Part shown: positions 51,325 to 58,374 of the stretch, piece by piece
Position numbering within the stretch: the stretch's first letter is position 1
Layout of the letters: each line of letters starts with the position of its first letter
NCBI GenBank assembly: GCA_950097015.1
Contig: CATNEN010000024.1
Location: 3,596,001-3,660,000, forward strand
Length of the DNA stretch: 64,000 bases
Source of the DNA: Macrostomum hystrix
Lineage: Eukaryota > Animalia > Platyhelminthes
Direction: 5' to 3'
Notes under the pieces: model-generated
Databases searched by the model: none
The model's input: only the letters and a program-made list of their open reading frames with translations
Told to the model about the DNA's origin: nothing
Translations under genes and position numbers: made by a program

Positions 51325-52800
51325 CTCCGACTGTGACAAACTGGAGTGACTAATGACATCTCGGACTGTGACAAACTGGAGTGACTAATGACATCTCGGA
51401 CTGTGACAAACTGGAGTAACTAATGACATCTCGGACTGTGACAAACTGGAGTAACTAATGACATCTCGGACTGTGACAAACCGGAGTGACTAATGACATC
51501 TCCGACTGTGACAAACTGGAGTGACTAATGACATCTCCGACTGTGACAAACTGGAGTGACTAATGACATCTCGGACTGTGACAAACTGGAGTGACGAATG
51601 ACATCTCGGACTGTGACAAACTGGAGTGACTAATGACATCTCGGACTGTGACAAACTGGAGTGACGAATGACATCTCGGACTGTGACAAACTGGAGTGAC
51701 TAATGACATCTCGGACTGTGACAAACTGGAGTAACTAATGACATCTCGGACTGTGACAAACTGGAGTGACGAATGACATCTCGGACTGTGACAAACTTGA
51801 GTGACTAATGACATCTCGGACTGTGACAAACTGGAGTGACTAATGACATCTCGGACTGTGACAAACTGGAGTAACTAATGACATCTCGGACTGTGACAAA
51901 CTGGAGTGACGAATGACATCTCGGACTGTGACAAACTGGAGTGACTAATGACATCTCGGACTGTGACAAACTGGAGTAACTAATGACATCTCGGACTGTG
52001 ACAAACTGGAGTAACTTATGACATCTCGGACTGTGACAAACTAGAGTGACTAATGACATCTCGGACTGTGACAAACTGGAGTAACTAATGACATCTCGGA
52101 CTGTGACAAACTGGAGTAACTTATGACATCTCGGACTGTGACAAACTAGAGTGACTAATGACATCTCGGACTGTGACAAACTGGAGTGACGAATGACATC
52201 TCGGACTGTGACAAACTGGAGTGACTAATGACATCTCGGACTGTGACAAACTGGAGTGACTAATGACATCTCGGACTGTGACAAACTGGAGTGACTAATG
52301 ACATCTCGGACTGTGACAAACTGGAGTAACTAATGACATCTCGGACTGTGACAAACTGGAGTAACTAATGACATCTCGGACTGTGACAAACTGGAGTAAC
52401 TAATGACATCTCGGACTGCGACAAACTGGAGTAACTTATGACATCTCGGACTGTGACAAACTAGAGTGACTAATGACATCTCGGACTGTGACAAACTGGA
52501 GTAACTAATGACATCTCGGACTGTGACAAACTGGAGTAACTAATGACATCTCGGACTGTGACAAACTGGAGTGACTAATGACATCTCGGACTGTGACAAA
52601 CTAGAGTGACTAATGACATCTCGGACTGTGACAAACTGGAGTGACTAATGACATCTCGGACTGTGACAAACTGGAGTAACTAATGACATCTCGGACTGTG
52701 ACAAACTGGAGTAACTAATGACATCTCGGACTGTGACAAACTGGAGTAACTAATGACATCTCGGACTGCGACAAACTGGAGTGACAAATGACATCCCGAT
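51325..52800. repeat. 35-bp minisatellite filling TBC1D13 intron 4
   Basis: Unit GACATCTCGGACTGTGACAAACTGGAGTGACTAAT. Confidence 0.97.
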
Positions 52801-52806
52801 GCCCAC

Positions 52807-53244
52807 CTGAACCAGGCGCATGCAGTCTGAGAAGTCGGCAGCCAGCAGTTGGTCCCTGATTAGCACTAGCATGGCGCAGCAGACATCCAGAAGGAAGTCG
52901 AACCGTCTCGGATCAGCCAGCAGCGAGTCCCAGACACGCAGCAGGTCGGGCAGGCGAAACTCCTGGGACAGCAGCAGTGTGAGGTAGCGGAAGGCGTAGA
53001 ATTCGGACTTCAGGCCCAGCTGGGTTAGGCGGCTGTGCAACGGCAGGTCGAGCAGTTGCAGCCGGGCCTGGAACTGGCGCATTCGGCCCTGAATGCCAGA
53101 CTGGGAGGAGTCCAGCTCCTTGATGAAATTGTCGCGAATCTCCGACATTAGCGAGGTGAAGCAGAAGAATGCGTCGGGCTCAGCGTGGGCGGACCATTTA
53201 GGATTGGGGTCGCTGGCCAGCACGTAGTAGATTGGGCCCAGCAC
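52807..53244 (-). CDS. TBC1D13: TBC1D13 exon 4
   Basis: VLGPIYYVLASDP...AEPDAFFCFTSLMSEIRDNFIK...FRYLTLLLSQEFRLPDLLRVWDSL...; phase 0 at both ends, 438 nt. Confidence 0.95.
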
Positions 53245-53680: not shown

Positions 53681-53749
53681 CTAGGCTGAGTTAATAATCT
53701 ATTATATTTCTAAGAAAAGTCGATAATCCCCGACCGCAGTGCTCATTAC

Positions 53750-53993
53750 CTCGTTCATTCCCTGCACGTAGCCCTGTCCCGGATTGAGCTTGGTGTAGAG
53801 AAACAGCAGCCTCTCGCAGACCTCCCAGTGAGCCTCCTGGCCCTCAGGCAGGCGGAACATGTCCGAGTCGCGCCGCCTGGCCGGCCGGGCCAACAGGGCG
53901 TTAACGCCGAACTGGGTGCGGCCGAAGTTCTGCGCCTCCAGCAGGCCGGTCTCCACCCGATGCCGCAGTGATGCCTGACGACGACGCGGACAC
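53750..53993 (-). CDS. TBC1D13: TBC1D13 exon 3
   Basis: Acceptor CGACCAG (AG at 53995-53994). (R)CPRRRQASLRHRVETGLLEAQ...EAHWEVCERLLFLYTKLNPGQGYVQGMNE (Gln finger). Donor GTAATG at 53749. Confidence 0.92.
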
Positions 53994-54013
53994 CTGGTCG
54001 GATGTCGGGGAGG

Positions 54014-57000
54014 CTTGGCGATGGATCATGCCCACCTTCTGTGGTACCTAAGCGGGCATGCGCAAGCCTGGCAAAGAGGCCGAGATCCAGGGCGGCGGAG
54101 GGAACTCCGGCCGGGACCTTACTAGGACCGTCCCAGAGGAGAATCCGCAGCCGACAGAGTGGTCCTGGACTAACCACCCAGGACACCTCTCTAAACAACA
54201 AAATGGTGACGCGTCACACCGCACGCGGCAGGCCCGGTCAGGGCAAGGGCACCGGCAAGAGAGACGGAGACGAGAGAAGAGTGCGAGTTAGGGGTCAATG
54301 GAAACTGAGAACCATCGAGAAGAACCCAGGACCAAGGACAGAGCACGAGAAGAAAGCGAGAGAGAGAAGGCGGCGGCAAAGAAGAACGAAAAGGAGAGAA
54401 AGAAAATAACACGAAAAGACAAAAACAGCCCAAAAAGCCTGTAAAACAAAATAAAAATAGCAACTTGGAACGTGCAACGAGCGAATATTCGAAGTAGCAG
54501 ATTCGGAGAGATATTGAAAGCGGCAGCAGCAGAATGGAATGTCACACTAGTAACGCAACTAAACGAAGTCAACCAAGGGATCCGAACCTTCCGAACCGGA
54601 AAGACCGAAACAACACTAGCCTACTCGAACAGATTAGGGATCTTGCTGGACGAAGACAGTTCGACCCTGTGGAAAATTACTGGCCGCAAGCTCCAGACGG
54701 TCACGGTCGAAGTAGGAAACTTCATGCTCATGGCCATCTACCAACCAGCTAAAGGAGACGAGGACTACGAAATCAAGATCCAACTCATCCGCGACGAAAT
54801 CGCCAGGATACACAGAAAAGCCGGAACAAAGAGAGTCCTCATTGTTGGCGGCGATCTAAACGCATCGATTGGAAAATATATGGCAAAAACTTTCAGCAGC
54901 GCAGGCAAGTACGGCATCGGACGAACAAACCAACAAGGAAGAGACCTACTGACATGGCTAGAAGAGACCGGAACAGTATGGGCAAACTCTTTCTTCAATG
55001 AGAGACGAAGGGGCACATGGAAGAACCCCCACAGCAAACGCTGGTATGAATTGGACGGCTTTATCATCAAGAAGGAACTAAGGCACGTAATGGTGGAAAA
55101 TATATCTACGGATAACAATGAGAACGGATCGGATCAGAAACCTAAAGTCATGACTTTAAGAACGAAAGTAGAAAAGAGACTTCTGAAAAGAATTTACCAA
55201 AAACAGGACGCGCAGAGAGAGAAACAGAAAAAACGAAAATTGCATGGGACAGATTGAGAGACGAACACACCGCGAAGAGTTACAAAGAAAATCTCGCGGA
55301 GAAGATTGAAAAGAAAAGAAAGAATAGATCCGAACTAAAGTGGCCTGAATATGAGGGGTTGATGCGTGAGACAGCCCTGGAGGCCTGCGGAGAGAGACCA
55401 AAACAGACTAACCCGTGGATGCTAGGACACGAAAAAGAATTAACAAAACTAAATCAGGACATTGCAAACATCTTGAAAGAGAGAATTGAAACCCAGAGCA
55501 AAAGGAATAGCAGACGAAGAGAGCAAGAGCTGCAGCAGATTAAAGAGAAACTAGTAGGAAAGAGACGAGAAAAGAAACAGAAGCTGACAGAATAGGAAGA
55601 ACGATGGTGGAACGCGATCATCACAGAATGCAGAGAACATCATGCTAAAGGGAACATGGGGGCGATGTACGACTGCCTCAAGAAACTAGGACTGAGAGAA
55701 ACTTTCAACAATCAGTGAGAACGAAACACTGTTCTCAGCCGAAGAATTCAAAGAACACCTAGAAGTCATTCAGAAGGACCGTTTCGAGAACGTTCCAGAA
55801 GACGTAATGAGGAACGTCAAGAGCTGCCCAAAGCGGACACTGACACACGAAGAACTAGAAGAAGCCAACGAAGAACTCGGGAAAGAAATCGAGAAAAAAT
55901 AATTTGACGATGCGCTAAAACAAATGAGAGACGGAGCACCGGGACAGGACGGAATACGCCTGATCTACGTTAAGAAAGCAAATGAAGAAGTGAGGAACGC
56001 GTTGTTTATAGAAGTGAAGAAACTCTTCTCAACACCAGCAACGGCTTGGAGGGAGAGCGATCGAATAGGCCAAATTGTAGCGCTTTTTTAAAAGGAGACA
56101 GGAAGAACTTAAACAACTATAGAGGAGTGTGCCTGCTACCGTTCCTGAGCCGAGTCCTGGCACGCATCATCGCAAGCAGACTGAGGATCTGGTCTGAACG
56201 ACCTTAAGTTGCTAGATGAAAACCAAGCCGGTTTCAGGACGGGACGCTCCACCATGGACGCCACCCAGATCATGTGGAGACTACAAGAGGACGCCGACCA
56301 ATACAACCAATCACCAGACAAAGTAGATGCCGAAATGACATCACTGACGCTGCTTGACCTAAAAAATGCGTACCCACGGATAAACAAGCCGGCCCTCTGG
56401 GCCTCTGTTACACTATGAGATGCCACACCACATGGTACGCAAACTACAGGACATCCATGAACACACGGAGTGTCCTGGACATACATACCAGGACACAGCC
56501 TCCTGCCTCAAAGAAAGAACATCAAATCCATGGAAACAAAAACTATCAACCTGACCTCGTCGCTGTTTGCCGACGACACGACGGTCATCGGCAACAAAGA
56601 TGAGATCGATCTTGGAACGGCAACGACAAAGGAAACAAGGAACAGTTTTGAAGAGCGCACGAATGAAGAAAAAGAAGAGAGAACGATCCTAGGCACCGAA
56701 GAGAGCAGAAACATCAGAATGCTGGGAACTTGGCTAGGCAGAAAGGAAGACTTGCGTTGTGCGTTGGCGCTGGGGCGTTAGACCTTGCGGGGGGTGGCTG
56801 GGGGGCGGGTGTACACCGCCGCGCGCTCATCTGGATTTCCGTCAGCGCGATTGGATAAAGTGTACACTCGTCACCCGCCCCCCCTGAGGACTGATTTCTA
56901 TCAGCCTTCCGCCCTGGCTTGGTCTGCTCTGTGCGTGTGCGGGCCTGGGGTGAGAGGCACTCCGGCTGCCGCCCCCTTCCCCGCTTGGCTTGCTGCTGTG

Positions 57001-58266
57001 TGTGTGAGGTGCCTGCTCAGGGGAGGCGGCGCGATGGGCGGCTCTCGCCTAGTTCGACGGCCTGGGGGCATGCCGTTCCTGTGTTTGTGCGTCAAGTGCC
57101 CCAGGCCCCCCTGCAAAGTAAGTAAGGAAGACTTGCACCAGAGACTAGCCAGAGCAACTAAGGCGTGGTTTGTCATCAAAAAGAGGCTGAAGAACACCAG
57201 ACTGACGAAGAAAACGCAAGCGAGAGTGGTTGAGGCGTGCGTGGAGAGCACCTTACTGTTTAACGCAGGCGTCCACCCTTTCCTGAAATCCGAAATAAAA
57301 CAGATGCAGAAATGCATGGACAAAAAGTACAGATACATCTGGAGTAGTAAAACTGAGGAACCACTACGGGAATTGGAACGCAAAGGTACAAACATGGCGG
57401 ACGTCAGGATCGAACTAGGAGTTAAGACCATCGAGACAAAGATAACAACGGCCCATTGGAGACGCATGGGGCACATCCTACGGATGCCAAACGACAGACT
57501 GGCGAAAATATGCGTCCTAGGATGGGACAAGAAATTAGAAGAAGTGAGGAAGGCAAAAAGAGGAGACAAACTTTGTTGAGTTATTGGAAGAAACTAGTAA
57601 AGGAGAACGGAGTACAGCCACAAGACATTGAGGAGTATGTAATGGACAGAGAAAAGTGGAAGAACCTAACAAGGAGAGCAGAAATGAGACTTAAGAGAAA
57701 AGAAAGACAGGACAGCAACCTACACAACATAACAGAGCAAAACGACAGCGCTGAAGAAAGGATGACAGAAGAAGACGAAGAACGCCGACTAACATGCACA
57801 TTCGACGGTTGCGGAAAGCGCTGCCTATCAAAAGAAGGGCTGGCAATCCACCAAAAACGGATGCACCGCAAGGACCTGGACATCGCCATTCGCTGCAGGA
57901 AATGTAAGATTGAGTTAAATTTCCTTAAGTTGGCGAGGCCAACATCAAGAACCACGAGTAGACATGCCAAGGAGAAGAAACTAGAGGAGACAAGAAGCGC
58001 TGCCCGATTTGTGGAAGTTGGATCACAAAGACCAACATGGCTAGACACAGGAAGAAATGCACAACAACGAACGAAGACGAACGAGCTGCCGGAGGTGCCG
58101 CCGTAGGAAGGAAATACAGATGGAAGGAGGCAGAGTGCGAGGGATGTGGTAAGAAGATGGCTGCGACCAACCTGGCGAGACACAGAAAGAAGTGCCAAAA
58201 CTGACCGGACCGGCCCGACGCGGGGCGACGCGCCCATGCCGAAAGTCGACAAAAGGGCAAGAAGAA
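54014..58266 (+). mobile_element. Full-length but disabled RTE-type non-LTR retrotransposon (APE endonuclease, RT, C-terminal Zn fingers)
   Basis: APE motifs IATWNV, GDLNA, RGTWKNP; RT motifs ENQAGFR, LLDLKNAY, LFADD; C2H2/C2HC fingers; short 3' UTR with GAAGAA tail; 13-bp TSD GATGTCGGGGAGG at 54001-54013 and 58267-58279; several stops and frameshifts. Confidence 0.93.
56756..57123 (+). mobile_element. 368-bp GC-rich non-coding retro-insert nested in the LINE
   Basis: 13-bp TSD AAGGAAGACTTGC at 56743-56755 and 57124-57136; AAGTAAGT tail; removal restores LGRKEDLHQRLARATKAW. Confidence 0.9.
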
Positions 58267-58374
58267 GATGTCGGGGAGGGAGAGGGGATGAGCCAGTTGT
58301 TGCAGCCAAGTGTTTAAAGCATTAATTTTTTTCTCAAGGTCAGATCTTCATGCTCTTAAGTTCAGAAAAAAATC

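What the first reader, a model, noticed from the sequence alone, without database searches (positions are those of the whole stretch)
54204..54480. Non-canonical 2A/StopGo-like motif (WKLRTIEKNPGP) upstream of the LINE endonuclease
A leader starting at ATG 54204 encodes ...GQWKLRT-I-E-K-N-P-G-P (54311-54334), then a basic tract leading, across a stop and a frameshift, to IATWNV of the APE domain. Established 2A motifs are D(V/I)ExNPG/P and occur at this position in APE-type non-LTR elements such as trypanosome L1Tc. Here Thr (ACC) replaces the normally invariant Asp, and ACC is two substitutions from GAC, so it may be a natural variant rather than decay. If active, it widens the StopGo consensus and separates a short N-terminal peptide from the APE-RT protein. 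If inactive, it may be an uncleaved functional motif.
Basis: partly seen in the sequence, partly recalled or inferred. Interest (0 to 1): 0.72.

Follow-up and report, generated by a model that had tools for sequence, protein, structure and literature searches.

The report
Threonine-variant 2A peptide in LINE leader
The motif is real: this window holds a dead copy of a jumping gene (LINE) whose whole clade, including young intact copies in the same genome, keeps a viral-type 2A "ribosome-skipping" peptide with threonine where textbooks show aspartate. Papers from 2026 have already shown that this threonine variant occurs in RNA viruses and works.

Summary
Observation confirmed. Window 54311-54334 encodes T-I-E-K-N-P-G-P in a leader ORF. 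The ATG is at 54203, not 54204, and the stop is at 54407-54409. The endonuclease (IATWNV, 54457) lies in another frame.

The window copy (54014-58267) is a full-length but dead LINE. It has 12-bp target-site duplications, at least six frame changes and a 368-bp repeat inserted in the RT.

Thr is not decay:
- At least 11 diverged lineages in this genome have T(I/V)EKNPGP, and another has TIHPNPGP. All four Thr codons are used.
- The motif is in frame with APE-RT-zinc-finger ORFs of 1273-1388 aa in 99.4-99.6%-identical young copies.
- Of 26 homologues from other assemblies, 22 have T, 2 G, 1 S and 1 D.
- Conservation covers only about 20 residues (p0-p19), the size of a 2A peptide. E-K and H-P at p14-p15 covary.

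Most likely the intact elements skip the Gly-Pro bond and release a leader peptide. This is untested here.

The consensus had already been widened. Li et al. 2026 report p12=T at 88.5% activity, and their dataset lists TIEKNPGP. A 2026 preprint reports 71%.

The elements also begin with an HDV-like ribozyme fold. Earlier notes of this scan report 2A-bearing LINEs elsewhere in this genome.

Verdict: a new member of a known kind, of moderate interest.

The parts
54002..54013 (.). 5' copy of the 12-bp target-site duplication ATGTCGGGGAGG
   Evidence: The same 12-mer recurs at 58268-58279, directly after the (GAA)n tail.
54014..58267 (+). Full-length but dead APE-type non-LTR retrotransposon (LINE). 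It measures 4254 bp including a 381-bp secondary insertion with its duplicated target. It lies antisense next to RabGAP/TBC exons.
   Evidence: The 5' end is defined by three copies that begin to align here. The 3' end is defined by the tail and the target-site duplication. APE is found by Pfam. A piecewise tblastn against an intact relative covers residues 63-1313 in changing frames.
54013..54088 (+). HDV-like ribozyme-type fold at the element's first nucleotides (P1 to P4 plus a CUGGCAAAGAG junction). It is partly decayed in this copy.
   Evidence: Rfam has no hit in the window. Homologous 5' ends of three other lineages match HDV ribozyme models over their full length at 22.5-24.2 bits, below the gathering score, and the L036 match starts at element nucleotide 1. 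In the window family P1-P4 can be drawn with helices that covary between lineages. The window copy has 1 mismatch and a 1-nt shift in P1 and 1 mismatch in P4.
54203..54409 (+). Leader ORF of 68 codons plus a stop. The same frame is open from upstream of the element's first base.
54275..54334 (+). 20-residue 2A/StopGo-like module (p0-p19): RRVRVRGQWKLR-TIEKNPGP
   Evidence: Across 39 sequences, conservation is confined to p0 R, p6 I/V, p10 L, p12 T, p13 I/V, p14-15 EK or HP, and p16-19 NPGP. The window copy has Gly at p6, where the C2 copy has Val.
54311..54334 (+). Core octapeptide T-I-E-K-N-P-G-P (Thr codon ACC at p12)
54335..54406 (+). Basic Arg/Lys-rich spacer that in intact relatives links 2A to the endonuclease
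   Evidence: Equivalent basic spacers of about 40-50 residues occur in all lineages.
54407..54409 (+). TAA stop that ends the leader frame in this copy only
   Evidence: The C2 copy reads through this position.
54445..55254 (+). Endonuclease (APE) open frame, with IATWNV at 54457-54474, offset 2 nt from the leader frame
   Evidence: Pfam PF14529. It is 40-48% identical to the APE of intact relatives.
55227..56751 (+). Linker and reverse-transcriptase pieces spread over three frames
   Evidence: tblastn shows frame changes near 55200, 55730, 56400 and 56470-56540.
56756..57123 (.). 368-bp high-copy young repeat inserted into the RT, flanked by a 13-bp duplication (56743-56755 and 57124-57136)
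   Evidence: There are at least 535 candidate copies in the genome, and the 40 that were scored are 98-99% identical.
57124..58198 (+). RT C-terminal part and the Cys/His finger region, in three frames
   Evidence: tblastn covers residues 939-1313 of the intact relative, with frame changes near 57555 and 57920. Relatives carry C2H2 fingers.
58257..58267 (+). (GAA)n-type 3' tail
   Evidence: The same tail type is seen in L036 and L090.
58268..58279 (.). 3' copy of the target-site duplication

Best explanation
Window 54014-58267 is a full-length but dead copy of a single-ORF APE-RT-zinc-finger LINE. Its leader carries a 20-residue 2A/StopGo module whose core is T-I-E-K-N-P-G-P.

Thr at p12 is the normal, selected state of this whole LINE clade, not a decayed Asp. 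In intact members the module lies in frame, 40-55 codons ahead of the endonuclease.

The most likely mechanism, which is inferred and not shown, is as follows. While the ribosome holds ...NPG-tRNA(Gly) in the P site, the nascent module blocks formation of the Gly-Pro bond, the leader peptide is released, and translation continues from Pro. The APE-RT protein then always starts with the same Pro-basic N-terminus, wherever translation began.

This fits three other features. The element starts with an HDV-like ribozyme fold that would cut it out of host co-transcripts. The 2A frame is open from nucleotide 1 in three of four lineages. One intact lineage has no in-frame AUG before the 2A.

In the window copy itself nothing works any more. 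The leader ends in a stop, the APE is out of frame, and the RT is broken and interrupted.
For: Shown by tool results:
- The motif and frames are as described.
- The pattern gives 69 hits against 2 control hits in the genome.
- There are 18 distinct Thr-type sites in about 11 lineages whose APE is only 30-53% identical to the window's. All have T(I/V)EKNPGP and use ACC, ACT, ACA and ACG for Thr. A further lineage has TIHPNPGP.
- The motif is in frame in open frames of 1273-1388 aa with APE, RVT_1 and C2H2 domains.
- Among 26 homologous cluster representatives from ENA, JGI, NCBI and Logan assemblies (one from a Tara Oceans marine metagenome), 22 have T, 2 G, 1 S and 1 D.
- Conservation is limited to p0-p19, and E-K and H-P pair perfectly apart from one E-L.
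- On the APE tree, T occurs on both deep halves, with D, G, S and I nested inside.
- Thr-type families are young and were recently mobile. Full-length copies are 99.4-99.6% identical, have a 12-bp target-site duplication, and public runs hold an empty-site contig.
- An HDV-like fold sits at element nucleotide 1.
- The leader frames are as stated.

From the literature:
- A natural p12=T 2A gave 88.5% separation in reticulocyte lysate, and TIEKNPGP and TVEKNPGP are listed in that paper's viral dataset (PMC12846837).
- A 'T19' class X peptide gave 71% in HEK293T cells (bioRxiv 10.64898/2026.09.24.754024).
- N-terminal 2As in APE-type LINEs are active (PMC3708506).
Against: - No translation, proteomic or ribosome-profiling data were available, so skipping by these particular peptides is not shown.
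- In the FMDV 2A context, D12A abolishes activity, and no D12 substitution passed the activity threshold in a deep mutational scan. Activity therefore depends on the upstream context, which differs here from the viral peptides that were tested.
- Most LINE-associated 2A-like peptides tested in 2026 showed only mid-range activity or 'reduced abundance'.
- In some lineages the first in-frame AUG leaves only about 25 residues before the skip site.
- The sequencing runs that hold the element are of unrecorded kind, so transcription is not proven.
- The HDV-like matches are below Rfam's gathering scores, and Rfam finds none in the window itself.
Confidence: 0.7

Rival explanations
1. The conserved Thr-type module is a translational brake rather than an efficient separator. 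It stalls ribosomes or makes them drop off at NPG-P and so keeps APE-RT output low, with little downstream product.
For: [quoted passage not shown] Only 7.4% of 2A peptides associated with reverse-transcribing elements were highly active in another screen, and most were mid-range. p12=T was the least efficient of the rare variants (88.5%).
Against: The same conservation pattern is expected for skipping. Young, mobile families need enough APE-RT to transpose. The two tested T variants separated at 71-88%.
Confidence: 0.15
2. T(I/V)(E/H)(K/P)NPGP is conserved for a reason unrelated to recoding. It could be a docking or localisation motif, or a site for a host protease, and the protein would stay fused during translation.
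For: No direct evidence for skipping exists here. An earlier, unchecked note of this scan (s1-402509) describes another LINE in this genome with a ubiquitin-tail motif at the same position, which would imply protease-based cutting is possible at this site.
Against: Every position that defines a 2A is kept (I/V p13, NPGP p16-19 in 39 of 39). The conserved block has 2A length and the i/i+4 hydrophobic spacing. The variants seen at p12 (T, G, D, S) and p14 (H) overlap those found in viral StopGo sites: T and G at p12 and H at p14, with D canonical; S at p12 is not among them. The identical octapeptide occurs in RNA-virus polyproteins with several 2As.
Confidence: 0.07
3. This is the reader's null hypothesis: the Thr is decay of a canonical D(V/I)ExNPGP in a dead copy, or the motif is a chance match.
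For: The window copy is dead and shows other decay in the module (Gly at conserved p6). ACC is two substitutions from GAC.
Against: Thr is present in both motif-bearing copies of the window's own family, in intact young relatives and in 22 of 26 foreign homologues, with all four Thr codons used. The pattern count is 69 against 2 for the control.
Confidence: 0.01
4. The stop and the frame offset between the leader and the APE reflect programmed frameshifting or reinitiation between a short ORF1 and ORF2.
For: Both copies of the window's own family have the APE out of frame with the leader.
Against: The offsets differ (2 nt in the window, 1 nt in the C2 copy) because of a 5-nt length difference in an A-rich run. 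The window copy has at least six further frame changes. All intact relatives have one continuous frame.
Confidence: 0.02

Closest known systems
N-terminal 2A/StopGo peptides of APE-type non-LTR retrotransposons: L1Tc and Ingi of trypanosomes, and the Rex1, L2, CR1, Crack and Ingi clades of marine invertebrates (Odon et al. 2013, PMC3708506)
   Same: A module of about 20 residues ending in NPGP lies a few dozen codons ahead of the endonuclease of a single-ORF LINE. The marine-invertebrate and plankton setting is the same, and one homologue is from Branchiostoma belcheri.
   Different: Those elements were found with the probe GD(V/I)ExNPGP and have Asp at p12. Here Thr is the clade's standard residue, the residue before it is variable rather than Gly, and p15 is fixed as Lys (or as Pro when p14 is His).
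Rare natural p12=T StopGo variants of RNA viruses (Li et al. [quoted passage not shown]
   Same: The octapeptides are identical: TIEKNPGP and TVEKNPGP are listed in Dataset S1 of Li et al.. One T variant was assayed at 88.5% and another at 71%. H at p14 paired with P at p15 (DIHPNPGP) also occurs in viruses.
   Different: Those come from viral or virome contigs, and both studies allowed only one deviation from the core. The LINE clade also has T-I-H-P-NPGP, which deviates at two core positions (p12 and p14), in 19 of the 39 aligned sequences. Neither study's one-deviation search design would include it, and 'TIHPNPGP' has no hit in the part of Li et al.'s supplementary files held here.
L1Tc 5' cassette: an HDV-like ribozyme (L1TcRz within Pr77) followed by a 2A and a single ORF (PMC3185411, PMC3383444)
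   Same: A ribozyme-type fold starts at element nucleotide 1, followed by a leader, a 2A, and then APE-RT with C-terminal C2H2 fingers.
   Different: No RNase H domain was detected. There is no sequence similarity to Pr77. Ribozyme activity is untested, and the Rfam scores are below threshold.

Membership tests
2A/StopGo peptide, core (D/G/C/N)(V/I)ExNPGP | C-terminal N-P-G-P (p16-p19) | tested here: met
   Window 54323-54334. Invariant in 39 of 39 clade members.
2A/StopGo peptide, core (D/G/C/N)(V/I)ExNPGP | V or I at p13 and E at p14 | tested here: met
   The window has I and E. In the clade, p13 is I or V in 39 of 39, and p14 is E in 20 and H in 19. H at p14 is a published active variant.
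2A/StopGo peptide, core (D/G/C/N)(V/I)ExNPGP | D (or G, C or N) at p12 | tested here: not met
   The residue is Thr (ACC, 54311-54313). T is listed by Li et al. 2026 only as a rarer variant outside their expanded core, although it was active at 88.5%.
2A/StopGo peptide, core (D/G/C/N)(V/I)ExNPGP | Conserved upstream context of about 10-12 residues that is needed for activity | tested here: met
   p0 R (33 of 38), p6 I/V (33 of 39) and p10 L (37 of 39) are conserved, and nothing is conserved upstream of p-3. The window copy has lost p6, which is Gly.
2A/StopGo peptide, core (D/G/C/N)(V/I)ExNPGP | Lies inside one ORF, in frame with the downstream protein | tested here: inconclusive
   Not met in the window copy, which has a stop at 54407 and the APE offset by 2 nt. 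Met in intact relatives with open frames of 1273-1388 aa.
2A/StopGo peptide, core (D/G/C/N)(V/I)ExNPGP | Co-translational separation at the Gly-Pro bond | not testable with these tools
   This needs a translation reporter assay or proteomics.
APE-type non-LTR retrotransposon (LINE) | APE endonuclease followed by a reverse transcriptase in one element, with target-site duplications and a simple-repeat 3' tail | tested here: met
   PF14529 and PF00078. 12-bp target-site duplications and (GAA)n tails. An empty site in other samples.
   No named reference LINE sequences were available. The ORF of about 1300 aa with a C2H2 finger is not what I know of RTE; that rests on my own knowledge.
HDV-like self-cleaving ribozyme | Nested double-pseudoknot P1-P2-P3-P4 with cleavage at its first nucleotide | tested here: inconclusive
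   RF02682 gives 24.2, 22.9 and 22.5 bits against a gathering score of 44, over the full model, on the element strand upstream of the 2A leader; the L036 match starts exactly at element nucleotide 1. The helices covary between four lineages when drawn by hand. There is no Rfam hit in the window. Cleavage is untested.
L1Tc/Ingi-type element | APE, RT, RNase H and C2H2 domains in one ORF | tested here: not met
   Pfam finds no RNase H in four full-length members.

The most novel reading that the evidence does not exclude
T(I/V)(E/H)(K/P)NPGP may be an old, separate class of StopGo peptide native to a ribozyme-headed LINE clade of marine animals and plankton. Thr would be ancestral, and p14-p15 would switch only as pairs (E-K to H-P). 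The class would include cores with two deviations (T12 plus H14) that no published screen could have included. The identical T-I-E-K cores seen in some RNA viruses would then reflect either shared constraints or exchange between these LINEs and viruses. The ribozyme, the stop-free leader and the 2A would act together as a 'self-extracting' cassette that lets a promoter-less LINE be expressed from any host co-transcript.
Probability: 0.3. Interest if true: 0.65.

Novelty: new member of a known kind. Interest (0 to 1): 0.45.

Why it matters
2A peptides are standard tools for co-expressing proteins, and their sequence rules are under active study.

This clade offers a natural data set with deep conservation of Thr at p12 in mobile, intact cellular elements. 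It also shows a strict E-K / H-P pairing at p14-p15, a naturally occurring D-bearing relative for comparison, and double-variant cores that have not been assayed. Together these make it directly testable which upstream contexts allow a non-Asp residue at p12.

For LINE biology, it adds another case outside trypanosomes in which a 5' ribozyme fold and a 2A occur together. This suggests a general way for promoter-less elements to free both their RNA and their protein from host sequences.

The window copy itself has no function and is ordinary genomic debris.

Tried and rejected
- **Rfam on the element and its 5' end in the window** gave no ribozyme hit. The fold is proposed only by homology with other lineages and by hand-drawn helices.
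- **MFE folding of the window 5' region** was not better than shuffles, z = -0.57. This says little for a pseudoknot.
- **Rfam on four foreign contigs** gave no HDV hit. By eye, the D-type relative L090 shows complementary strands for P1, P2 and P4; this was not checked by script.
- **RNA evidence**: the only runs that hold an intact relative are of unrecorded kind and are kept as contigs. They show presence, near-identity and an empty site, but neither expression nor transcript ends.
- **Programmed frameshift between leader and APE**: rejected.
- **Chance or decay of Asp**: rejected.
- **Clade naming** (RTE, CR1, Ingi and so on): not possible without named reference sequences.
- **The tested p12=T peptide of Li et al. 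(ND_130348)**: its sequence could not be read because the stored dataset is cut, so its upstream context could not be compared.
- **Supplements of Rao et al. 2025** are not held.
- **The big representative protein search, structure prediction and complex prediction** were not used, because no claim here rests on them.
Full report
**1. The observation**

The sequence is as described. It encodes 36 residues, then T-I-E-K-N-P-G-P (54311-54334, Thr = ACC), then an Arg/Lys-rich tract, and ends at TAA 54407-54409. The endonuclease frame, NKIKIATWNV..., is open from 54445, is shifted by 2 nt, and Pfam recognises it weakly as PF14529.

The back-translated pattern for [V/I/M]-E-x-N-P-G-P occurs 69 times in the 220-Mb genome against 2 for the reversed control. 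Motifs of this type are therefore strongly enriched in this genome.

**2. What the window holds**

The element runs from 54014 to 58267.
- It is flanked by a 12-bp target-site duplication, ATGTCGGGGAGG, at 54002-54013 and 58268-58279.
- It ends in a (GAA)n-type tail.
- It lies antisense beside RabGAP/TBC exons on the minus strand.

Laid against an intact relative's 1313-aa ORF, the copy covers residues 63-1313. It changes frame near 55200, 55730, 56400, 56470-56540, 57555 and 57920. A 368-bp repeat (56756-57123, with its own 13-bp duplication) interrupts it. That repeat has at least 535 candidate copies in the genome, and the 40 scored are 98-99% identical.

Only two other copies of this exact family were found.
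- One, on contig C2, is 92% identical and 3'-truncated.
- The other, on contig C39, is about 310 bp long. It joins the first 229 bp directly to the last 81 bp and has its own target-site duplication.

The C2 copy keeps T-I-E-K-N-P-G-P, with a synonymous change in the Gly codon. Its leader/APE offset is 1 nt rather than 2, because of a 5-nt length difference in the A-rich spacer. So the stop and the 'frameshift' are decay and not a designed feature. The window's family is extinct in this assembly.

**3. Thr is the clade's normal residue**

A search of the genome with the window's APE found 37 matches. Almost all of those with flanking sequence carry T-I-E-K-N-P-G-P 40-55 codons upstream of (I/L)ATWN.

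A census of all pattern hits gave 58 distinct sites: 26 with D, 18 with T, 6 with G and a few singletons.
- The D and G sites belong to other LINE families with classical LLxxAG-D(V/I)ExNPGP contexts.
- The T sites, apart from one isolated T-M-E-K-NPGP site with no LINE context, belong to about 11 lineages. Their APE is 30-53% identical to the window's, and their leaders cannot otherwise be aligned.
- Across these lineages Thr is encoded by ACC, ACT, ACA and ACG, and the other core codons also vary synonymously.
- A further lineage has T-I-H-P-N-P-G-P.

In intact members the motif lies in one open frame of 1273-1388 aa together with APE, RVT_1 and, in relatives, a C-terminal C2H2 finger. No RNase H is detected.

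These families are young.
- Full-length copies are 99.4-99.6% identical.
- One copy (L036) has a perfect 12-bp target-site duplication.
- Contigs of four public runs of the same organism, one study and of unrecorded kind, join its two flanks across exactly the element with 12 shared letters. This is an empty site.

**4. Relatives elsewhere**

Two word-based protein searches returned full-length homologues, 36-45% identical, from ENA, JGI, NCBI and Logan assemblies. One contig is from a Tara Oceans marine metagenome. One N-terminally truncated hit is annotated Branchiostoma belcheri.

Of 26 cluster representatives that include the leader, 22 have T at p12, 2 have G, 1 has S and 1 has D (D-V-E-K-NPGP, P0106).

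An alignment-free stack of 39 sequences anchored on NPGP shows where conservation lies:

| Position | Residue | Count |
|---|---|---|
| p0 | R | 33 of 38 |
| p6 | I/V | 33 of 39 |
| p10 | L | 37 of 39 |
| p12 | T | 34 of 39 |
| p13 | I/V | 39 of 39 |
| p14 | E or H | 20 and 19 |
| p15 | K, P or L | 19, 19 and 1 |
| p16-19 | NPGP | 39 of 39 |

- E pairs only with K (once with L), and H pairs only with P.
- Nothing is conserved upstream of p-3.
- The conserved block therefore has the length of a 2A peptide.
- The window copy has Gly at p6 where its sister copy has Val. This is a further sign of decay.

On a maximum-likelihood tree of the APE domain, T occurs on both sides of the deepest split (support 100/100). 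The D, G, S and I variants are nested inside T-bearing groups. The root is not known, so 'T ancestral' is only the parsimonious reading.

**5. Surroundings that bear on the mechanism**

The first nucleotides of lineage A match HDV-ribozyme models over their full length, starting exactly at element nucleotide 1 (RF02682, 24.2 bits, E = 0.007 in a 161-nt search; RF00094, 21.7 bits). Lineages B and F give 22.5 and 22.9 bits at the corresponding place. All of these are below Rfam's gathering score.

Drawn by hand, P1, P2, P3 and P4 can be formed in four lineages, including the window's family, using different and compensating sequences. For example, P1 is GCUUCCU/GGGAAGC, GCUUUUC/GAAAAGC or GCUUGGC/GCCAAGC. 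All share a CUGGCAAA junction. The D-type foreign relative appears to show the same layout by eye. The window copy has small defects in P1 and P4.

The 2A frame has no stop from element nucleotide 1 to the 2A in three of four lineages (95-102 codons). The intact lineage B has no in-frame AUG before the 2A.

Earlier, unchecked notes of this scan describe ribozyme-plus-2A and AUG-less leaders in other LINE families of this genome, which they call a flatworm. I used them as leads and tested the idea only on the Thr-type lineages.

**6. Mechanism**

Shown here: a conserved, in-frame module of 2A size and 2A layout, with Thr at p12, in recently mobile elements.

Inferred: it causes StopGo at Gly-Pro, releasing the leader and giving APE-RT a fixed Pro-basic N-terminus. 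The ribozyme would do the equivalent job for the RNA.

Literature support for this inference:
- A natural p12=T peptide separated at 88.5% in reticulocyte lysate.
- p14=H separated at more than 95% (PMC12846837).
- A T variant separated at 71% in HEK293T cells.
- N-terminal 2As of LINEs are active (PMC3708506).

Literature caution:
- D12A kills FMDV 2A.
- No D12 substitution passed the activity threshold in F2A or P2A scans.
- Many LINE-borne 2A-like peptides are only moderately active or reduce protein abundance.

I put StopGo in intact members at about 0.7, and a mainly attenuating role at about 0.15.

**7. Comparison with what is known, and novelty**

The kind is known. It is a 2A at the N-terminus of an APE-type LINE, described for L1Tc and Ingi and for marine-invertebrate LINEs in 2013.

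The Thr variant is also known. Li et al. 2026 list T as a rare p12 variant, and the part of their Dataset S1 that is held contains TIEKNPGP 11 times and TVEKNPGP 12 times among 45 T-(I/V)-E entries. A September 2026 preprint reports one-deviation 'class X' peptides, 237 of them on contigs associated with reverse-transcribing elements, which are mostly non-LTR-like.

What I did not find in the papers read here:
- a LINE clade in which Thr is the fixed state;
- the strict E-K / H-P pairing;
- the T-I-H-P core with two deviations, which both studies' one-deviation search designs exclude.

The window's motif is therefore a new member of a known kind. The clade-level pattern is a modest extension.

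**8. Limits**

- The organism label 'flatworm' comes from earlier notes and not from my own test.
- Copy counts are lower bounds.
The broken places are described only.

Noticed in passing
window 56756-57123 (duplicated target at 56743-56755 and 57124-57136): A 368-bp GC-rich repeat is inserted into the dead LINE's RT. The genome search found at least 535 candidate copies, and the 40 scored are 98-99% identical. It is a very young, very abundant non-autonomous element with a 13-bp target duplication.
   Followed up: partly
window 54013-54088; L036:1667-1737; L023:2571-2647(-); L007:2682-2773(-): The Thr-type LINEs begin with an HDV-like ribozyme fold. Rfam scores are 22-24 bits, below the gathering score. 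The L036 match starts at element nucleotide 1, and the helices covary between lineages. This is the same layout as the L1Tc 5' cassette.
   Followed up: partly
L005:1776-2085 (G000:C39, about 15328775-15329085): A roughly 310-bp mini-copy of the window's family joins the first 229 bp (ribozyme fold and 5' leader) directly to the last 81 bp and tail. It has its own target-site duplication, AATAAGTTGA. It is either a non-autonomous deletion derivative that transposed or a later internal deletion.
   Followed up: partly
L063 (G000:C24:1279174-1280394): A lineage A leader with T-I-E-K-NPGP runs, after 12 residues, straight into the C-terminal Cys/His finger region. This is another internally deleted copy that keeps only the two ends of the ORF.
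   Followed up: no
L031, L033 (G000:C5:2199529, C1:14063508) and four further pattern hits: A lineage in the same genome has the two-deviation core T-I-H-P-N-P-G-P, in frame with open frames of 1412 and 1547 aa. The same core is found in 18 foreign homologues.
   Followed up: partly
L045, L046, L048, L061, L070, L081, L083 (various contigs): Other LINE families of this genome carry canonical D- or G-type 2As (LLLRAG-DVExNPGP, LLLPLA-GIEPNPGP). These are followed directly by a Cys-rich PHD-like finger rather than by the endonuclease.
   Followed up: no
L036:1655-5724 (G000:C41): Contigs of four public runs of the same organism join the flanks of this intact 4046-bp element across a 12-bp shared target, at higher depth than the element pieces. 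This is an insertion polymorphism. Alternatively, if the runs are RNA, it is a host transcript from an allele without the insertion.
   Followed up: partly
window 52750-53244(-) and 53702-53956(-): Two exons of a RabGAP/TBC-domain gene lie on the minus strand (PF00566, E = 2e-17). The dead LINE sits antisense about 50 bp from the second exon, presumably in an intron.
   Followed up: no
P0083 (NCBI MCP3668064.1): A 707-aa fragment of this eukaryotic LINE clade, with T-I-E-K-NPGP, is deposited as a protein of a Gammaproteobacteria MAG. It is evidently a binning contaminant.
   Followed up: no
L090:2860-7000 (ENA ERZ25067903 contig): The D-V-E-K-NPGP relative from another genome sits inside a (GAT)n microsatellite on both sides and ends in (GAA)n. 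This may indicate a microsatellite target preference.
   Followed up: no
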